Positions 1 to 41,231 of a DNA stretch of 45,893 nucleotides are shown piece after piece (position 1 is the stretch's first letter; each line of letters starts with the position of its first letter). Both the position numbers and the translations under genes were made by a program. The DNA is from Klebsormidium nitens (taxonomy: Eukaryota > Plantae > Klebsormidiophyceae), in contig DF237616.1 in NCBI GenBank assembly GCA_000708835.1, forward strand, positions 1 to 45,893. The letters run 5' to 3'. The notes below the pieces were generated by a model. It did no database searches. It had not been told where the DNA came from and was given only the letters and a program-made list of their open reading frames with translations.

Positions 1-67
1 AGGTTAGAGTGTAGACCTAGAGCTAGGCCGTGACTCGGAACACTCCATATACATTGTGTGAACTTGA

Positions 68-1300
68 TTGATTGAATATCACTTCCAACAATGCTGTGTT
101 TCAAAAGGACTTTCCAAAGAAGAAGATGTCATGGCAGAAGGGCTCAAAGGATGTGAGGAAAGTTTAGCAGAAATCATTAAGCTCTTAGAAGTATTGGAGG
201 GTCCACTGTTCCAAAGTCCAGGAGAGCAGGCACAGTTCTTAGAACAATGCGGTCTGAGGGAGGATGAAGAGAACTCAAGAAAGCAAACCGAGAAAATAGA
301 CCGAAGGGGGAGGTCGAGGGGTACGATTCCGATCATCTAGAGCTAGCGCATGAAGGAGAACAGCAAAATGCATCTTTAGAGCAACACAAAAGCTTCCAAT
401 CGGAGATAATAATAGAGTCTGAGTCAAAGTCCGAGTTTAGCACGTCAGGGGAGAGCAAGTCGAGCATCGAGCCTGACTCGCACGAGATAGAAGCATTGGA
501 ATACTTGAATAAAGGGCTTAAGGAACGGCTTGAGAGCAGTGAGAGAAAAGTTGCACCCAGGGTGGAAAAATTACCAAATCACTCCGACGATCAAAAAGCC
601 TGCAGCGCCGTGTTAGTATAGGAGAGAGCGCAGACAGAGCCGAGCTAGCCCGGCGTTGCAAGCAGAAAGAGAAAAAATCAAGGTTCTCAGTAGCTGCGGA
701 CATGATGAGCGGCAAAATGGCACGATTCAATGGCAAAGCAAAGGGCTGCAGCCATTGACAAAGGGCCTGAGGGGAGCCAGGGAAAGCGGGTGCGGGTGTT
801 TAGGTGGGAAAGGAACGCAGCTAGCGTAGCTAAGGGGATTCAAGCAGAGAAAGCTGCGGGATTCGAAGAAGAACTAGCGAAAGACTCGAGCAGGCAAGAG
901 GCTCGAAACATGGGAAAGTCCGGAGATTGACAATTGCAGAAGAAGGAGGGTCTGGACGAGGTTTCCAACACAGGATTCCAAAACTGCTAGAAGAAGGGAC
1001 CCTGGAAATAGCAGGGCTCCGAAAGGAGACAATACGGGAAAGGGGCGAAGCAGATTTCGAGAGCAATGCGAAGGAGAAGCGAAAGGGCTCGGAATCAAAG
1101 TCAGCAAAGAGATTTTGAAAGGACATGGACCAGTTCATGAGCAGACCCCGGGCACTTTTCGACTGGAGGAGCTGAAAGCTGAGAAGGTGCGATTCGAAGG
1201 GAGGGTGAAGGCACCAGGTGCCAACGACATGATCCAAGGCAAGTTCGAGAAGCCAGAGATTAGGATTCGGAGCGCTAACAATAAGATTTAGGAGCCTACC
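68..1300 (+). pseudogene. Decayed, charged (E/K/R/S-rich) coding-like remnant, probably transposon-derived
   Basis: Purine-rich plus strand with several short broken frames (68-340, 730-930, 927-1118) separated by stops and frameshifts. No splice structure and no recognisable domain, so the family cannot be assigned. Confidence 0.25.
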
Positions 1301-1633
1301 GCTAAAATAAACAAAAAGGAAAAGAAAAGGAGACCGTATGAGTAGACGGGCAGATCCTCAGTAATAAAAAATGCGGGCCGTTTCTCTTATCTCGAACTCC
1401 TCATCATATAGCATTGATGGGGTATTAACCCAATGCACTTCAGCAACCTTATTCTTGGGTCTTGAACATTGATACCATATCTATACAGATTACTGTGAGC
1501 CTCAAAAATGGTTACGACTGTTCAAGAAAAGGGCTGAATTTTAGGGGGGTTCGTACTGTTCATACTGCCATTCATACTATTCATACTAATAGCAGTACTA
1601 AAAACCAAGCAAGCCCAAGAAGGGGTTATAGAT

Positions 1634-3126
1634 ACATGTAACGTACGCGGATCTGCGTGCCTGGAACTCCGCCGGGTTGGCGCAATGTCACCGCGGTACT
1701 AGTGCAATACTAGTTCGACTATTGTCGTACGGTATCATTAAGTTTCAGGGTCGTACTACGATGACTGCGGGTTGGTACCAAGGTGCTAGTACACTCGGAG
1801 TGCAGTGGCACCGTACTCGCGGTGAAGGAAAAATTCGGGTTGCGAACAACGAGCTTGGAGTTGGCGAGCAGACATGGTTTTCAAGAGGCGAAATCGTCTT
1901 GAAAGATGGAAACAATTCAACAATGGCTGCCGTAAGCGCTGCTTGCTCGTTTACGCCGCTCTTCAAGAAAGTGCAAGCAGCATTGTTGACTATGTTGAAT
2001 GCAAGGGCCCGCAAAGAAGTCTTTCTTCGGGCTTGAGAAAATCTTTCAAGGTGCTTTTTCAGCAAGTCAATTCTGAAGGCCCCTCAAGACAATCTTGGAG
2101 GCTTCCCTAATTTCTGCTGAAGTTGCATGGAGTTGCTGTTTGATTTGTCAGCTCATCTTTTTGATGGGCCTAGCTAAGCGGAGACATACAATCACGTCCA
2201 GCTTTTCAGCAGCCCCAGCTCTCCAGCTGGATGTGCAAGGTGTACAACCCACCGTACCTACCTGCTACTACCTAGTAGTAAACCTAGGTAGGTACCTATT
2301 GCATGTTCTGGAGCATCCACACGAGCCGTACATGAGCAGACCCTTGGAAGCATCGAACGGTAGCCAGGCCGTTGGACAGGCCTCAAAGGGTCCGTTGTCC
2401 CGAATTTCAAAAAACCGTACGTACGGTAGGCACTCGACTACCTAGGTAGGTTTTGAATGTACGGCGATGTCCGCTGTACCGCCTTCAGGTTGTTGCGCTA
2501 GTGGCAATCTATACCGGTCTGTACCTATCTACCTATCCATGTACCTAACACCTAGATATATAAGTACCGTACTGGCGTGCTGGGTGTACGATACCAAGGT
2601 ATCGTGTGGTATTGGTACCGTACCTAGGCCTTACCGTAGGCTACGAGTCTACCTTCATGGTAGTGCCTGGGTAGGGTACCTAGCCTCTAGGTACCTGCTT
2701 TCGGTACCGTGGGTACGCTCCTACCTCAGCCGGTATCTGGCCGGTTGGTGGTTGTTTGACCGGGCACTTCTTGTCTGCAGGCGCAGAGTTATAAAACGCG
2801 CGGGAAGTATGAATTTTCCCTGGCCGGGGACACCTGTAGCTCCGCAGAGCCAGAACTTTCTCCAAAGAACCCCCGAAATCGCGGGTCTGTACAGAGTTTT
2901 AAGCAACTTCTGTGCAATCAACGCAGTGACCCTGGGGGTCTGTGAACTGCTTTCATTGGAAGGAGTGCAATCCCGACGGGCGGAATTTTGCGTTTTGTGT
3001 ACACGGTACACGGCGGTACCATACATAGAACGCGGTTGGCGCGTACTGCCAGTGCACTAATACCGCGATAGTACCGCGCGGTACTCCATGAAACTGCACA
3101 ATAAGGAACCCGCGTATGTGACATGT
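1634..3126. mobile_element. Degenerate ~1.5-kb element with imperfect terminal inverted repeats (solo LTR or old TIR element)
   Basis: 1634-1650 ACATGTAACGTACGCGG vs reverse complement of 3110-3126 matches 15/17. 1690-1706 vs reverse complement of 3053-3069 matches 15/17 at an almost symmetrical offset. Ends read TGTAAC (1637) ... GTGACA (3123). TATAAAA near 2790. No target-site duplication seen. Confidence 0.4.
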
Positions 3127-33800: not shown

Positions 33801-35023
33801 TGTTGTGGTCTGCAATGCACGTAGGCTCATCAAAGCGTCCTGGCGAATAATCGAGTCACAGCTGATGGGCAGATTCATTCCATCGGTGGGCCATCATGTC
33901 AGGAAAAACCGAGTCTAAGTCGCTCTGTCAAATGGCCATGTAAACACTCTCGGCTTGGACACAGACGCAGCCCTGCACCCGTTCTCTGACCATCTGGACA
34001 CGGAACGGCTCGGGCGTCCGTTCCCCTTGCCTTTTTTCACTGGGCGCGGCCCCGCAGGTGGTGGCGGAGCTGCGGGCGGTGCTGGGCGGGCGCCCCCCGC
34101 TGTACGACGACCTGCCGCGGCTGCAGTACACGGGGCAGGTGGTCAAGGAGGTGCTGCGGCTGTACCCCTCCATCCCGCTCTTCCCGCGCGAGGTCGAGCG
34201 CGACGACGTGCTGCCCACCGGCCACAAAATCCCCGCAGGCGACGTGAGCAGCCGCCACCTGCCCCGCAGCATGCTGCGGCTTCGATGGGAAGCACCACTC
34301 CAAGGATGTGCTGTGGAGCCCCTTGAGCCCCTCCGCATTTGGCAATCTCTCGAATTGAAGACATTCGAATGCTTGGGAGATGGTCGTGATGCGATGCTGT
34401 TGGCTTTGGGGGAGAGAGTGCCCTGGTCCTACTGCCACGGCCGTGCCTGACCCCCCTCGGCTGGCCGTGGCAGGTGGTGTTCATGTCCACGTACGCCATG
34501 GGGCGCAATGCAGCCGTCTGGGAGGATCCGGAGACCTTCAACCCGGTGAGGCACCCGACAGACAGCCAACTGCCGATCTCAAAGCGACCTTGCTGGAGGT
34601 TCGGTCATCTCGTTTGGGCAAACTGACAACTTGTTTAGCATCCTCGTTGAATCATGGTCGGACTACGGTCTATCACCACGTTGGCCAACAATCTCATGTG
34701 AGAGCAAAGTTTCTGAACCGAACCCATGGGCGAAGCCTGCGCTTCCTTCCATCTGATTGTCTGCCCGTCGTGGTTTGCAGGACCGCTTCTCCCCCGAGGC
34801 GGAGGCGGCACGGCACAAGTTTGCGTGGGTGCAGTTTGGCGCGGGCCCGCGCATGTGCCTGGGCGCCAACTTCGCGATGATGAGCGTGACGCAGGTGGTG
34901 GCCACGCTGGTGCAGGCCTTCCACTTCCGGGCAGTCCGGCCACGCGGGGAGCAGCTGCCCTTCTCGTACGACATCACCATGAACTTCCCGGGGGGGATCA
35001 TCATGGAGGCGGTGCCCCGGTAA
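30870..35023 (+). CDS. Cytochrome P450, probably plastid-targeted, ~610 aa, 9 exons; family not assigned
   Basis: Exons 30870-31390, 31627-31729, 32105-32245, 32518-32677, 33024-33217, 33556-33768, 34058-34243, 34474-34545, 34781-35023, in frame. I-helix GAGHETTA, K-helix EVLR, PDRF, heme motif FGAGPRMCLG. Confidence 0.95.
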
Positions 35024-36724: not shown

Positions 36725-39700
36725 TCAAGTCGCCAAGTCTGGTTTCGCTACGCTCTCCCGTTCCACGCTGGCACCCGTCTCTGCCCGCCTCCGCTCATCC
36801 AGGAACCCCGCCAGCACCTCCTTGGCTGCCCGGTACTGCACCGCCGCTCTCTTTGCGGTCTCCACGCTCTCAAATGCGCGTGCGGCTGGCGGCTGCTCGT
36901 CTCGCTCGGCGGTAACAGCGGCACTCTCGACCCCCGCGCCGGCATCTCCCAACTGCCGCACCTGCTCGAACATGCGCCGCCGCGACAGCCGCGACTCCCC
37001 CCCCGGCGGGGCATCCAGCCTGCCGTCCTCGGAGCGCACTCTCTCCAGCCCCTCGTCCCCCTCTGCCCAGCTCTCGCCGCACTCCGTCATCGGGGCGCCC
37101 GTCTCGACGCGGAACGTCCCCGAGACGCACGAGAAGGCCTGTGCCACCTGGGGCTGCCTCACCGTGAACGGCTCCGGCAGGCGTTCCGCCAGGCCGGCCA
37201 GCGCGCCGGCATTCCGGTACAGCTCCGCGTCCGCGTTGACCGTAACGGAGGTGAGGTAGACGGGCGGCAGCAGGTGCGCGAGCAGGCCGCCCTGCACGCC
37301 CACCACGGTCCAGCGCAGCACCTGCGGGAGGACGAAGAGGCGAGCATGGGAAGCAGCAGGAGGCGCCGAGACGTGTGAGGCAAACGCAGAGGGCGAGGCA
37401 CGTGCGGATACTAGGCGACAACCAAATAGGGTGGGGGTAAAAGGCGCCCAGCGCTGTTGCTAGCCTGGCAATCCTGGCGTCTGGTCGAAACTGAGGAGCC
37501 GAATACCGGATCTTCGCGGCCCTTCGACCTACCACACGAAACCTACATCAGAAGCACAGTCGGATTCCTTCAAAGTTGCCGTTTGAGCAATCAGACAATC
37601 AAGAATGCTCCTATCCAACGATCATTGGAAAAGATGCCATCCCCTCTTTTGCCGCAGCCCGTCCTCCGCCCCGTACCTTGACTTGCCGCGTCTCCCTTTC
37701 CATATCTTCCACTGCTCCGTTGTGCGCCTGCTGCGCCCGCGGCCGTGACACCCAGAGGTGCACCTTGACGCCGTCCCGCAGCCGCCACCGGCCCCCGCTC
37801 TCATCGCGGCAGACTACGGAGTCCTCCTCCGCAGCCCCGGTCTCTGTGCCAGCCACCTGCCCGTTTGCTTCCGCAGGGTTATCTAGACGAACCGCTTCTG
37901 CCTCTGCCCCAGGTTCTGGGACCGGCTCTGGCGTATCCGCCCCTGGTCCCCCGCTCTCCAGGCCCAGAGCCCAGGCATCCGGGGTAGCCTCTGCCGGCTG
38001 GTCGTCGCTCACGCCCTCCGTCATCTCGACCTTGGCTTTCTTCCCTCCCCGCACGTCGTCCAGCGGCTCCTCCTTCGCGCTGCCGCTCTCCTCCTCGTCG
38101 CTCTTGACGCTGTCCCGGGCTGCCTCGCCCACTGCCTCCATCGCACCCCCCCCGCCTTCCGCCGCCACTGCGGGGCCTGCCTCGGCAGCTGCATCTCCGC
38201 CGTTTGCAGCAGCGTCTGATTCCTCGACGGGGTCCGGGTTGACCGTCTCCAACGCCGTCCTTCCTCGTCGCCTCTCCTCGTGCAGCTCTCGCTCCAGCTG
38301 CGTGCACAAGAAGCGCCGGAACGCGCGCACGGCCAGCACCTCTGCGCGGCAGTCGCGCAGGGAGGCGTCGTCGCGGGCCAGCTGCGGGGCGGAGTGGCTG
38401 CCCGTGCCCAGGGCCACGCAGCGCAGCGCAGGCTCGCCGGCGGGGGATGGCAGCTCCAGGATGATGGCCGCCAGAACCTGCGGAGACACAGCAGTGAGAA
38501 ACTACGCTGAAGAAGAAAGGGGTGGCGTTGTGTACCCCACATGAATTGGCCGGACTGGACGTACGCACAAGGACAAGGTGATGATCTACGGGCGGACATA
38601 GCATGATCTTTCTCAGTTTAGATCCATAATCTGCTCAACCGCAGAACGTCCCGCCCTCCAGACTCGCAACTGCCCGAGTCTGTTTCCCCCTCGGAGTGGC
38701 CGGCTGCGCTCACCTTCTTCCCAGGCTGCGCGCTGCTGCTTGCCGGCAGCTGCCGGTACTTACGGCACGCCACCTTCGCCAACTTGTAAGCGAACGCATT
38801 GCTCCCCGCTCCCTCCGTCTTCCCATCATCCTGCTGGGAGTCGCGGCCTCCCAACTTCCTCTTCTTGTCTGCCCGCTCCCTCTCTAGCTTCTTGGGCCCC
38901 TCGCCCTGAACTGCGGGCGACGGCTCCGCCTGTGCTGTTTCCTTCCGCGCCTTCTTGGCCTTCCCCCGCGTGAGCTCCTCCAGTGTCCCCGGCCGCTGTG
39001 CCTCCAGGTGCTGCAGCACTGCGTCCGCCACCCCTTTCTTGGCCTCCCCCTTGCTCAGGCCCTCCGCAGTGAACGTGCGGCCGTCCACCGCAAACTCGGC
39101 CACGAACGCGGGCGTGACTGTCGGCAGCCGCCGGACCACGATCTCGAAGTGTGCCCCTCGGCGCATGGTGTACTCGTTGAGCAGGCTCACCGGGTCCTTC
39201 TCGGTGCCCGCCACCGAAGCATACACCCGCTTGCCCAATGCTGGGCCGGGGCTGGTTGCAGGTTCTACCAAGTGACTGGCTTGCGGCGCAGCTGGCGCGG
39301 TCCCAGATTCTCTGGACTGAGAACCGTCAGTCAGGGCCAACTCGACCCTGGCGGCAGAAGGGCCTTCTGGGGGCCCCTCTTTGTTCTGGGCCCCCTCTCC
39401 TGCGCTGCTGGTAACAGGAGGGGTCCTTCCTGCCTGCTGCGGTTGCGTTGCGCTGCCTGCAGTGGCGGGGCCCACCCCTGGGAGCATCTGCGCCAGCGCC
39501 GCTATTTCCTGTGCCGTCACTGCTGGCGCTGCGCTCTGGGCTGGCTTGCCCGCCACTTGGGGTCGCTGTTGGGCGGGCTGTGCGTCAGGTCCTTGCAGGC
39601 TCTCGAGGGCTGCGCGCGCCGCCAGCTTCTTGGCAACGTCCTTGCGTGGGGCGCCCGCCACAAAGAAGCGCCCTGCGATGGCCAGGCTGGCCGTGTGCGT

Positions 39701-41231
39701 GGGCCCCACCCAGCGGTCGCCCGCGTCCTCCGAGAAGCTGAAGACAGCATGCACCCCACGCTTCTGGCACAGCTCGTTGAGGGCGCTCATGGGATCTTTG
39801 GGCGCAGCGCCCGCCACTGCCGCGGCTGGCGGCCCGCCCTGAGCAACCGGGACCCAATTGCGCAGTCCCGGAACGCCGTTCAGCGCAGCCTCGGCTACCG
39901 CATTCTTGGCCGCTGGCTTGGAGGGGCCTGTTTGCGTGAACGTCTGGCCACAGACAATGAGGGTGGCGGTGTGGCGGGCAGTTACTTGGTCCGTTGAGAA
40001 GGAGTAGGCGGGGGCGGCCAGCTTGAGCTTCTGGCAGGCCTCGTTGAGCAGGCTGATGGCGTTCTTGACCAGGGGGGCAATGGCACCCCCCGCCCGGTAA
40101 GCCACCGGGCTGACCAGCACGCCTGCACAGCAGGGGAGCCATGCCTTGGATTGACAATTGTCTTTGCAGCGGAGAAGAAAGGTTGAGGATGCATCTTCTG
40201 GTGTTTGGCTTGCCATCTGGTGCGCTTTACAATTACTTTATTGAGGCGTTATCTATTCATATCGTGAGTGAGGGTGCAGCAAGCATGCGGCCAGGTGAAA
40301 TGACTGGCTTTACTCCACGACTCGCGCGAACCCAACTGTCCCATCACATACTAAACAAATTGGATGTGCCGACACCATGCCCTGTTTCATCGTTTGCACT
40401 TTCAGCTTCTCACGTCAACTTTTGCAGATTTGATCAGGTCATTGGGCCTTTTATCAGGGGCTTACATCGCAGGATCTAGTGGGGGCTACAGGCACATACC
40501 TTTCTGCTGTGCCGCTATCGTGTTGGGCACTGAGCGCGGAGCAAGTGCGGTGCTGGAGGGAGGCGACCGGTGGGGACATGCCGGGGATGGCCTCCTGGTC
40601 TGCCCATACGCAGGCGGACCACCCGGTTGTTGCAGTGGGGGGGCTGCCAGCTGGCTGGCGGGGTGGACCATTGACGGATGCTGCACAGTGTACTGGGGCG
40701 CGTGGCTGGGGACTGGCTCGTGAATGGCGCCCCCAGGAGGGTAGAAAGCGGGTGGGGCTTGCCAGGAAAGTGGTGGCTGCCCCAGGTGGTAAGGTGATGC
40801 AGAAACTGCACGCGGTTGACGAACTGTCAAGCTAGCGACTGGTGCATCCCAGATCTCAAATCAACAGATCCTGATGACCCAACTGCGCCTGTCAAGCCAT
40901 AAAGAGATTGCGTGGCTGCAACATGAGAATAATGTAAGAGCAGCCTGCCTTGCCTCTGGGACCCAGAGCTGCACCTGTGCAGTTCGACGCAGCTCATGTT
41001 AGGAGATCTTAAAAGGAGCTTTGCCCCTGGCAGCAGCAATGCAAAAGTTTGTGTCATGGTCCGCTCACCTGTGCCTGCTCCAATGCCAGCATGCGTCTGC
41101 TCCCAGCTCCCCAGGCTGCCCTGCCTGTAGTGGTACGGAAGTGCGCCGTTTGCTTCATTCTGAGACCTAGAAAGACCAGAGGCCCCTGCTCCTTGTGCCT
41201 GGTCCCACCCCACAGGCCTCCACGACGCCAT
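36725..41231 (-). CDS. ADAR-like protein: three dsRNA-binding motifs plus a degenerate adenosine-deaminase (editase) domain, ~1100 aa, 5 exons
   Basis: Exons 41231-41069, 40823(or 40838)-40500, 40122-38714, 38477-37677, 37321-36725; GT-AG with consistent phases. Editase motifs GKK|VLAAII, ALGTG, DCRAEVLAVRAFRRFL, RWRLRDGVKVHLWVS, K|VLRWTVVGVQGGLLAHLLPPVYLTSV, SRLSRRRMF, AKRAAVQYRAAK. Basic NLS-like KAKKARK and KKRK. The two 5' P/Q/G-rich exons are less certain. Confidence 0.88.
39005..39199 (-). other. dsRNA-binding motif 3 of the ADAR-like protein
   Basis: KDPVSLLNEY...PAFVAEFAVDGRTFTAEGLSKGEAKKGVADAVLQHL. Boundaries approximate. Confidence 0.85.
39597..39799 (-). other. dsRNA-binding motif 2 of the ADAR-like protein
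   Basis: KDPMSALNELCQK...GPTHTASLAIAGRFFVAGAPRKDVAKKLAARAALESL. Boundaries approximate. Confidence 0.85.
39872..40066 (-). other. dsRNA-binding motif 1 of the ADAR-like protein
   Basis: KNAISLLNEACQK...HTATLIVCGQTFTQTGPSKPAAKNAVAEAAL, an alpha-beta-beta-beta-alpha pattern. Boundaries approximate. Confidence 0.85.

What the first reader, a model, noticed from the sequence alone, without database searches (positions are those of the whole stretch)
37686..38348. All three zinc ligands of the editase domain are replaced by arginine while the catalytic Glu is kept
Seen, aligned by eye to human ADAR2: H394 in DCHAE reads DCRAE (CGC at 38348-38346, Glu retained at 38342-38340); C451 in STSPCG reads SRPRA (CGG at 37739-37737); C516 in SCSDK reads TRQVK (CGG at 37688-37686). 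No CxxK exon is hidden in the 37322-37676 intron. Residues equivalent to much of the IP6 pocket are retained (R401, K519, R522, W523, K662, Y668, K672), though the terminal W..K is lost. Animal ADADs lose the Glu instead. Inference: a folded pseudo-enzyme whose metal pocket has become cationic and may bind RNA phosphate or a ligand. It could act as a dsRNA shield or sensor, or as an antagonist of Dicer or of an active editase.
Basis: partly seen in the sequence, partly recalled or inferred. Interest (0 to 1): 0.8.

Follow-up and report, generated by a model that had tools for sequence, protein, structure and literature searches.

The report
Dead RNA-editing domain in an alga
This alga makes a double-stranded-RNA-binding protein whose RNA-editing domain has lost its zinc site and its substrate loops but is still kept by selection, so it is a conserved dead enzyme; the three arginines seen here are particular to this species and are not a conserved pocket.

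Summary
Spliced transcript contigs from four studies carry them without one mismatch and join the exons at 37677/37321 with nothing between.

The gene has five exons on the minus strand and encodes 1091 aa: three dsRBDs followed by a split A_deamin domain.

Five orthologous loci from related algae show what is conserved:
- **Lost in all six:** both zinc-binding Cys, and about 46 residues between them. In ADAR2 those residues form the 5' binding loop, the base-flipping loop and the dimer helix.
- **Not conserved:** the arginines. The H394 site reads R/H/R/R/R/R, the C451 site R/L/M/I/I/I and the C516 site R/R/R/L/L/L. The Glu is Ala in one orthologue.
- **Uncertain:** the C451 assignment depends on a one-residue gap. 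Without the gap it is Ala.

The domain core is under purifying selection (dN/dS 0.24-0.33). dsRBD2 and dsRBD3 are more constrained (0.05-0.18).

Verdict: this is a real, conserved pseudo-deaminase, a new variant of the ADAD/ADR-1 kind outside animals. It most likely acts as a non-catalytic dsRNA binder. The "cationic pocket" reading is not supported.

The scan had already noted this same gene on this same window (s1-270330), not on other DNA.

The parts
41069..41231 (-). Coding part of exon 1. The start codon ATG is at 41231-41229, and the transcript runs about 280 nt further upstream.
   Evidence: Transcript contigs and joints; ORF of the spliced mRNA.
40500..40805 (-). Exon 2, a Pro/Gln-rich low-complexity N-terminal region.
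   Evidence: Joints 40805/41069 and 40121/40499 in four runs; translation.
38714..40122 (-). Exon 3. It holds dsRBD1 (39872-40075), dsRBD2 (39596-39799), a conserved island in the linker (39473-39526), dsRBD3 (39005-39199), NLS-like basic clusters (38852-38965) and the start of the deaminase-like domain (38714-38800).
   Evidence: Pfam dsrm, E 8.3e-22, 3 stretches. dN/dS is 0.05-0.18 for dsRBD2 and dsRBD3, 0.36 for dsRBD1 and 0.25-0.9 for linkers. Coordinates.
38283..38477 (-). First core part of exon 4 in the deaminase-like domain. It includes the helix motif DCRAE (38340-38354): Arg at the H394 site (38346-38348) and the retained Glu (38340-38342).
   Evidence: Pfam A_deamin 5.7e-11; alignments to ADAR2 and ADAR-like chains and to the profile; dN/dS 0.27.
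37818..38282 (-). Acidic Ala/Glu/Gly-rich insert of about 155 residues inside the domain. It is probably disordered and is retained in the mRNA.
   Evidence: No joints inside exon 4; dN/dS 0.70-0.84; no match to the ADAR profile.
37746..37817 (-). Second core part of exon 4, ending in the strand HLWVS, which corresponds to FHLYIS of ADAR2.
   Evidence: HMMER alignments; these columns are invariant in six orthologues.
37677..37745 (-). Remnant of the Cys-to-Cys segment. It holds the C451-site Arg (37737-37739, or Ala 37734-37736 if ungapped), 17 residues of spacing, the C516-site Arg (37686-37688) and the K519 equivalent (37677-37679).
   Evidence: Profile positions 136-198 have no counterpart. 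Spacing is 17 against 47-90 (median 63) in 85 homologues.
37322..37676 (-). Intron 4 (GT..AG). It is fully removed and holds no alternative exon.
   Evidence: Joint present in all four runs. Only one low-depth unspliced contig was seen.
36725..37321 (-). Exon 5 coding part, the C-terminal half of the deaminase-like domain. It holds the R522/W523 equivalents at its start and the K662/Y668/K672 helix at 36812-36856. The stop codon TGA is at 36725-36727.
   Evidence: Pfam A_deamin 2.3e-20; PDB hits to ADAR1, ADR-2 and ADAR2; dN/dS of the core 0.19-0.38; residue table.

Best explanation
The gene encodes a catalytically dead ADAR-type protein, and selection keeps it as a non-catalytic double-stranded-RNA binder.

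**Shown**
- The common ancestor of six algal orthologues had already lost both zinc-binding cysteines. It had also lost the roughly 46-residue segment that in ADAR2 carries the 5' binding loop, the base-flipping loop and the dimerisation helix.
- The remaining deaminase-like core, and above all dsRBD2 and dsRBD3, stay under purifying selection.
- The mRNA is made and correctly spliced.

**Inferred**
- RNA is bound through the three dsRBDs. Conserved basic clusters between dsRBD3 and the dead domain suggest a nuclear location.
- The dead domain survives as a folded scaffold built around an inositol-phosphate-type basic core. Seven IP6-contacting residues are invariant.
- It may serve in protein contacts or in RNA-shape recognition, but not in chemistry.
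- The vacated metal site is simply filled: Arg at the His position in 5 of 6, perhaps standing in for the lost Zn2+ charge next to the retained Glu, and hydrophobic or Arg side chains at the two Cys positions.
- The all-Arg state of this species arose late. By parsimony, CTG changed to CGG at the C451 site in this lineage only. It is not a conserved ligand pocket.
For: - **Gene model and codons:** confirmed by spliced contigs in 4 runs from 4 studies with 0 mismatches; the ORF is 1091 aa.
- **Domains:** dsrm x3 at 8.3e-22; A_deamin at 5.7e-11 and 2.3e-20.
- **Orthologues:** L001, L007, L002, L003 and L004 have the same exon layout and GT/AG sites.
- **Ligand table:**
- **Missing segment:** profile positions 136-198 are absent, and the spacing is 17 against 47-90.
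- **Selection:** dN/dS of the core is 0.33 and 0.24 with upper CI 0.54 or lower. The insert is 0.70-0.84. dsRBD2 and dsRBD3 are 0.05-0.18. Intron divergence is at or above dS.
- **Active-site positions evolve at or above the core average**.
- **Ancestral states:** the tree topology, with algal clade support 1.0, makes Arg at the H394 site ancestral, makes the His of L001 a CGC-to-CAC reversal, and makes the C451-site Arg unique to the window.
- **Precedent for dead ADAR-family regulators:** ADAD1/2 and cADR-1 (PMC7360552).
Against: - No structure could be predicted for the spliced domain, so folding, IP6 binding and the Arg-Glu pairing are inferences.
- L001 (His + Glu) and L002 (Arg + Ala) each break the supposed Arg-Glu pair.
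- A core dN/dS of 0.24-0.33 is only moderate constraint.
- No RNA-binding, localisation or partner data exist.
- Orthology rests on gene structure and on these being the only close relatives found. There is no synteny support: tblastx of the flanks found nothing.
- All orthologues come from a narrow clade, so the sample holds only six sequences in two subclades.
Confidence: 0.65

Rival explanations
1. One reading: the former metal pocket has become a functional cationic site, built from three Arg plus Glu, that binds an RNA phosphate or a small anionic ligand.
For: Arg at the H394 site is present in 5 of 6 orthologues and Glu in 5 of 6. Animal ADAD-like proteins put Lys at the C451 site, so a cationic replacement of a zinc ligand recurs.
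Against: Relatives have Leu, Met or Ile at the C451 site and Leu at the C516 site in one subclade. The closest relative has His at site 1, and one orthologue lacks the Glu. These columns change as fast as or faster than the core average. The RNA-contacting loops around the pocket are deleted.
Confidence: 0.1
2. The dead domain is a regulatory partner subunit. It would pair with an active deaminase of the alga, such as ADAT1 or another ADAR-like protein, and deliver dsRNA or tRNA substrates to it, as ADR-1 does for ADR-2 or ADAT3 for ADAT2.
For: There is precedent in PMC7360552 (cADR-1 and ADAR3 regulate active ADARs). The core is conserved without catalytic residues. A conserved short island in linker 2 could be a docking motif.
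Against: The ADAR2-type dimer helix lies in the deleted segment (the mapping of the helix is from my knowledge of the ADAR2 dimer structure). No active partner was identified here. Whether this alga edits A to I is unknown.
Confidence: 0.15
3. The deaminase-like part is a decaying relic. Only the dsRBD part is functional, and the C-terminal half drifts neutrally.
For: The acidic insert is nearly neutral at 0.70-0.84. The active-site residues vary. The C-terminal tail differs in length between subclades.
Against: dN/dS of the core is 0.24-0.33, and no bootstrap replicate reached 1. There is no stop or frameshift in six sequences, the splice sites are kept, and 39% of core columns are invariant, including seven IP6-type residues.
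Confidence: 0.06
4. The protein is still an enzyme that uses other ligands or another chemistry.
For: Glu is retained in 5 of 6 orthologues. L001 has His in DCHAE.
Against: There is no conserved replacement Cys or His. The His five residues after the C451 site and the Cys of VVCR are both lost in L007. The flipping-loop segment is absent. By parsimony the His of L001 is a reversal.
Confidence: 0.03

Closest known systems
Animal ADAD1/ADAD2 (TENR family) and C. elegans ADR-1
   Same: These carry one or more dsRBDs plus an A_deamin domain with a mutated zinc site, and they are kept as non-catalytic RNA-binding or regulatory proteins (PMC7360552). ADAD-like hits in my search also lack both Cys.
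   Different: ADAD-like proteins keep His and lose Glu, with patterns such as H-A/V-K-A, and they keep a Cys-to-Cys segment of about 48 residues. The algal protein loses His, keeps Glu, has only 17 residues there, carries three dsRBDs and a 155-residue acidic insert, and comes from a streptophyte alga. In the tree it forms its own clade on a long stem.
Human ADAR2 deaminase domain (PDB 1ZY7 and others) and ADAR1
   Same: These are the best solved-structure matches by sequence. They share the helix D-C-x-A-E, the strand H-L-[YW]-x-S, the motif K-x-x-R-W-x-V-x-G-x-Q-G and the K662/Y668/K672 helix. The architecture of dsRBDs followed by a deaminase domain is also the same.
   Different: The zinc ligands H394, C451 and C516 are absent. 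The segment from about 452 to 515 is largely deleted. The C-terminal W687/K690 are absent.
Protist ADAR-like proteins (Symbiodinium, diatoms, paradinids; PMC11946409)
   Same: They are non-metazoan A_deamin proteins of the ADAR type. A diatom member (Pseudo-nitzschia pungens, P0083) and metagenomic Z-alpha + A_deamin proteins are among the nearest tree neighbours.
   Different: The paper reports that they lack dsRBDs. The ones I scanned have Z-alpha domains and an intact H/E/C/C site. The algal protein has three dsRBDs and a dead site.
ADAT1/Tad1 (tRNA A37 deaminase)
   Same: It belongs to the same Pfam family. It is the only A_deamin protein expected in plants, according to the literature (PMC4323055).
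   Different: ADAT1 has no dsRBD and an intact zinc site.
Carbonic-anhydrase-related proteins (from my own knowledge, not tested here)
   Same: They are pseudo-enzymes in which a zinc-binding His is replaced by Arg while the fold is kept.
   Different: The fold and function are unrelated. This is only an analogy for filling a metal site with Arg.

Membership tests
A_deamin domain family (Pfam PF02137; ADAR/ADAD/ADAT1) | Significant match to the family profile above its gathering score | tested here: met
   42.9 bits for exon 4 and 73.8 bits for exon 5, against a cut-off of 27. 149 bits against a profile of 85 ADAR-type domains.
Catalytically active ADAR | N-terminal dsRBD(s) followed by the deaminase domain | tested here: met
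   Three dsrm stretches, E 8.3e-22, on one spliced mRNA together with the A_deamin exons.
Catalytically active ADAR | Zinc ligands His394, Cys451 and Cys516 | tested here: not met
   The window reads Arg, Arg (or Ala) and Arg. Both Cys are absent in all six orthologues.
Catalytically active ADAR | Proton-shuttle Glu396 | tested here: met
   GAG at 38342-38340. Glu is present in 5 of 6 orthologues and is Ala in L002.
Catalytically active ADAR | Segment between Cys451 and Cys516 that carries the 5' binding loop and the base-flipping loop | tested here: not met
   Profile positions 136-198 have no counterpart. The segment is 17 residues against 47-90 in 85 homologues. Which loops lie in this segment is from my knowledge of ADAR2 structures.
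Catalytically active ADAR | IP6-coordinating basic and aromatic residues | tested here: inconclusive
   The R401, K519, R522, W523, K662, Y668 and K672 equivalents are invariant. K376 is His, K629 is Arg or Thr, and W687/K690 are absent. No structure or ligand test was possible.
Catalytically active ADAR | Adenosine deamination in dsRNA | not testable with these tools
   This needs an enzyme assay.
ADAD (TENR) family | dsRBD plus a catalytically dead A_deamin domain | tested here: met
ADAD (TENR) family | ADAD pattern of site loss (His kept; Glu and both Cys replaced) and descent from the metazoan ADAD clade | tested here: not met
   ADAD-like hits read H-[AVTL]-[KS]-[ADG]. The algal proteins read R-E-x-x. 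The algal clade is separate, on a stem of 1.05 substitutions per site. The tree has no outgroup, so descent is not excluded.
ADAT1/Tad1 | Single deaminase domain without a dsRBD, and an intact zinc site | tested here: not met
   Three dsRBDs; the zinc site is lost. Phylogenetic relation to ADAT1 was not tested because no reference was available.
Protist ADAR-like group (PMC11946409) | ADAR-type deaminase domain outside animals, without a dsRBD | tested here: inconclusive
   The nearest tree neighbours include a diatom and metagenomic Z-alpha + A_deamin proteins (SH-like support 0.91). However, the branch is long, there is no outgroup, and dsRBDs are present here.

The most novel reading that the evidence does not exclude
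The dsRBD-plus-editase architecture, held to be an animal invention, also exists in a lineage of streptophyte algae. It got there either by an independent fusion or as a pre-metazoan relic shared with protist ADAR-likes. There it has been turned into a non-catalytic dsRNA reader. Its zinc site is replaced by an Arg-Glu pair, and its substrate loops are excised. That route to a dead editase is the reverse of the animal ADAD route.
Probability: 0.35. Interest if true: 0.7.

Novelty: new variant of a known kind. Interest (0 to 1): 0.5.

Why it matters
- **Reach of the family.** Dead members of the ADAR family (ADAD1/2, ADR-1, ADAR3) are known regulators in animals. The literature I could search treats ADARs as a metazoan innovation (PMC4323055) and reports that protist ADAR-likes lack dsRBDs (PMC11946409). 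I found no paper on such a protein in streptophyte algae.
- **A natural experiment.** A conserved, expressed protein with three dsRBDs and a dead editase domain in the plant lineage shows what the editase fold can do without chemistry.
- **A second route to inactivation.** Here His, both Cys and the loops are lost while Glu is kept. That contrasts with ADAD and may show which parts of the fold are structural.
- **A caution.** A striking residue pattern in one genome, three Arg in this case, dissolved once five orthologues were lined up.

Tried and rejected
- **Word searches.** The search with the dsRBD exon ORF found four orthologous ORFs. Searches with the exon 4 N-terminus and with exon 5 found only L001 and L007. 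No stop-free reference of 623 aa or more exists, so the full-length 1091-aa protein could not be looked for by length-matched search.
- **Exhaustive profile search with exon 5.** Only two algal clusters scored better than 1e-30. No full-length algal protein is in the library.
- **Metagenome scan with the exon 5 profile.** 122 pattern matches, none a relative. I did not use the second scan, because the first also covered exon-internal patterns that transcripts would carry.
- **ESM Atlas by features:** no usable hit.
- **Exact look-up of the window's dsRBD ORF:** not on record, so I could not confirm the organism's name myself.
- **Synteny.** tblastx of the L002 and L003 flanks against the window found nothing.
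- **Rejected alignment.** A plain MAFFT alignment placed PCGDA on a GDAA string inside the acidic insert. I rejected this as a low-complexity artefact, because the strand HLWVS that must precede the motif lies about 130 residues later. Profile alignment and HMMER against ADAR2 agree on that.
- **Alternative zinc ligands.** The conserved-looking His after the C451 site and the Cys of VVCR were considered and rejected, because L007 lacks both.
- **Structure prediction of the spliced domain: not run.** Folding single exons would not show the pocket, so I left that out.
- **ADAR-versus-ADAT1 origin: not resolved.** No ADAT1 reference sequence was available.
- **Other.** Tandem repeats in the window: none.
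Full report
**1. What is in the sequence**

The minus strand of 36.4-41.6 kb carries one gene. Contigs of four public runs from four studies lie on it without a single differing letter. They skip four stretches with GT..AG ends: 40806-41068, 40123-40499, 38478-38713 and 37322-37676. The runs are not on record as RNA, but contigs that lack exactly these introns can only come from spliced RNA.

The spliced message has one long ORF of 1091 aa, from ATG 41231 to TGA 36727-36725. Pfam finds three dsRBDs in exon 3 (E 8.3e-22). It finds the A_deamin domain split over exon 4 (5.7e-11, profile positions 1-51) and exon 5 (2.3e-20, positions 150-319). By sequence, the closest solved structures are the ADAR1, ADR-2, ADAR2 and an ADAR-like deaminase domain.

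**2. The observation**

- DCRAE, with CGC at 38348-38346 and GAG at 38342-38340.
- SRPRA, with CGG at 37739-37737.
- TRQVK, with CGG at 37688-37686.

In HMMER alignments, DCRAE lies on DCHAE of ADAR2. The run K-V-L-R-W-T-V-V-G-V-Q-G lies on K519-I-A-R-W-N-V-V-G-I-Q-G. This fixes Arg at the H394 site, Glu at E396 and Arg at C516.

The C451 site is less sure. The strand HLWVS matches FHLYIS, and the profile match ends there. With Pro laid on Pro and a one-residue gap, Cys451 corresponds to Arg. Without the gap it corresponds to the following Ala. No Cys or His stands at either place.

No exon is hidden in intron 4. All four runs join 37677 directly to 37321, and only one low-depth unspliced contig was seen.

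My ADAR2 numbering was anchored on the chain alignments. Which residues touch IP6 is from my knowledge of the 1ZY7 structure.

**3. Relatives**

A word search with the dsRBD exon found four ORFs. Their contigs carry the same three ORFs in the same order. A sixth orthologue, L007, came from the exhaustive search. All six keep the same splice donors and acceptors.

A tree made on profile-matched columns gives ((L002,(L003,L004)),(L007,(window,L001))). Support for the algal clade is 1.0 and its stem is 1.05.

| Site (ADAR2 numbering) | window | L001 | L007 | L002 | L003 | L004 |
|---|---|---|---|---|---|---|
| H394 | R | H | R | R | R | R |
| E396 | E | E | E | A | E | E |
| C451 (gapped) | R | L | M | I | I | I |
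| C516 | R | R | R | L | L | L |

By parsimony on this tree:
- Arg at the His site is ancestral, and the His of L001 is a CGC-to-CAC reversal.
- The Arg at the C451 site arose only in the window's lineage, by CTG to CGG.
- The third site differs between the two subclades by one base.

The four positions changed 1, 1, 3 and 1 times. The mean for 228 core columns is 0.95, and 39% of those columns never change. So what is conserved is the loss of the zinc site, not a set of arginines.

Two candidate substitute ligands are both absent in L007: a His five residues after the C451 site, and the Cys of VVCR.

**4.

Against a profile built from 85 ADAR/ADAD-type domains, the algal proteins match positions 38-135 and about 200-363. 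They have nothing for positions 136-198. The distance between the two former Cys positions is 17 residues in all six. In the homologues it is 47-90, with a median of 63.

From my knowledge of ADAR2 structures, that segment carries the 5' binding loop, the base-flipping loop with E488, and the helix of the asymmetric dimer. Its loss argues independently against catalysis, and against ADAR-like engagement of the flipped base.

In the other direction, a 155-residue acidic insert sits between the active-site helix and the next strand. It stays in the mRNA and evolves almost neutrally.

**5. Selection**

Nei-Gojobori estimates with bootstrap:

| Region | window-L001 | L002-L003 |
|---|---|---|
| Deaminase core, 232 codons | 0.33 (CI 0.20-0.54) | 0.24 (CI 0.12-0.45) |
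| Acidic insert | 0.70 | 0.83 |
| dsRBD2 | 0.05 | 0.12 |
| dsRBD3 | 0.06 | 0.18 |
| dsRBD1 | 0.36 | 0.36 |
| Linkers | 0.25-0.60 | 0.51-0.90 |

Intron 4 has diverged by 0.68 and 0.19 in the same two pairs. That is at or above dS, so dS is not inflated.

The gene is therefore not a decaying pseudogene. The dsRBDs are its most constrained parts, and the dead domain is moderately constrained. The basic clusters after dsRBD3 (KAKKARK ... KKRK, and KRARK ... RKRK in the other subclade) and a short island in linker 2 are also conserved.

**6. How it most likely works**

Shown:
- It is an expressed, conserved protein with three dsRBDs.
- Its editase-type domain has no zinc ligands and no substrate loops.

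Inferred:
- It binds dsRNA through the dsRBDs, probably in the nucleus, without editing.
- The dead domain persists as a folded module around an inositol-phosphate-type basic core.
- The vacated metal site is filled by whatever fits: Arg at the His position, perhaps compensating the lost charge beside the retained Glu, and hydrophobic or Arg residues elsewhere.

L001 (His + Glu) and L002 (Arg + Ala) show that even the Arg-Glu pair is not strictly needed.

Whether the protein shields dsRNA, competes with RNase III enzymes or escorts another enzyme cannot be told from sequence. The partner-subunit model (ADR-1/ADR-2, ADAT3/ADAT2) is the main rival.

**7. Comparison with what is known**

Animal ADAD1/2 and C. 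elegans ADR-1 are the closest in kind. [quoted passage not shown] The ADAD-like proteins among my hits keep His, lose Glu and both Cys, often put Lys at the C451 site, and keep about 48 residues between the Cys positions. The algal pattern is different.

In the exhaustive search, the only strong hits are the algal ORFs themselves. The next hits (60-73 bits) are animal ADAR/ADAD proteins and unnamed metagenomic ones.

In an unrooted FastTree, the nearest neighbours are two metagenomic H-V-C-C proteins, a Nematostella protein, a diatom (Pseudo-nitzschia pungens) protein and metagenomic proteins. Several of these, including the diatom one, carry Z-alpha plus A_deamin. The branch is long and no ADAT1 outgroup was available, so the origin is open: ancient ADAR-like, independent fusion, or transfer.

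On the literature:
- PMC4323055 concludes that the ADAR family is a metazoan innovation.
- PMC11946409 reports protist ADAR-likes without dsRBDs.
- I found no paper on such a protein in streptophyte algae. Absence from that library is not proof.

Another agent's note (s1-261752) names the genome as the streptophyte alga Klebsormidium nitens. I could not test that.

**8. Verdict**

The loss of the zinc site is real and confirmed in cDNA-derived contigs. The pseudo-enzyme reading is supported by conservation and selection. The three-arginine cationic pocket is a feature of this one species, and one of its three assignments depends on the alignment.

The finding is a new variant of a known kind, a dead ADAR-family dsRNA-binding protein, in an unexpected lineage. 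Interest is moderate.

Noticed in passing
window 39473-39526 (-): A short island, P-A-V-T-A-Q-E-I-A-A-L-A-Q-M-L-P-G-V, is nearly invariant across both algal subclades, inside an otherwise fast-evolving linker between dsRBD2 and dsRBD3. It could be a docking motif.
   Followed up: partly
window 37818-38282 (-): A 155-residue acidic Ala/Glu/Gly-rich insert lies inside the deaminase-like domain. Its dN/dS is 0.70-0.84, yet its length, its charge, a K-[KR]-A-K motif and an A-L-G motif are kept in all orthologues.
   Followed up: partly
L001:3168-3980: The closest relative reads DCHAE. By parsimony this His is a CGC-to-CAC reversal at a CpG, not a retained ligand. Both Cys are still absent.
   Followed up: yes
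L002:8016-8831: One orthologue reads DCRAA (Glu to Ala, GAG to GCG), while a sister contig from the same metagenome keeps Glu. This rests on a single contig and was not verified by reads.
   Followed up: no
window 37294-37672, 38461-38722 and 40162-40395: Low-depth contigs (depth 2-6, against 28-50 for the spliced form) run unspliced through introns 4, 3 and 2. They are probably pre-mRNA or a low level of intron retention.
   Followed up: no
window 34757-35023 (+): An ORF carries a cytochrome-P450-like haem-binding motif (F-G-A-G-P-R-M-C-L-G). It is probably the last exon of a neighbouring P450 gene.
   Followed up: no
window 1-2000: This stretch has a strong purine excess on the + strand (GC skew 0.20, AT skew 0.24) at 48% GC. 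No tandem repeat scoring 80 or more was found anywhere in the window.
   Followed up: partly
P0083, P0141, P0018 (proteins): A diatom protein (Pseudo-nitzschia pungens) and metagenomic proteins combine Z-alpha with an intact A_deamin domain and have no dsRBD. They are protist ADAR-likes of the kind described in PMC11946409.
   Followed up: partly
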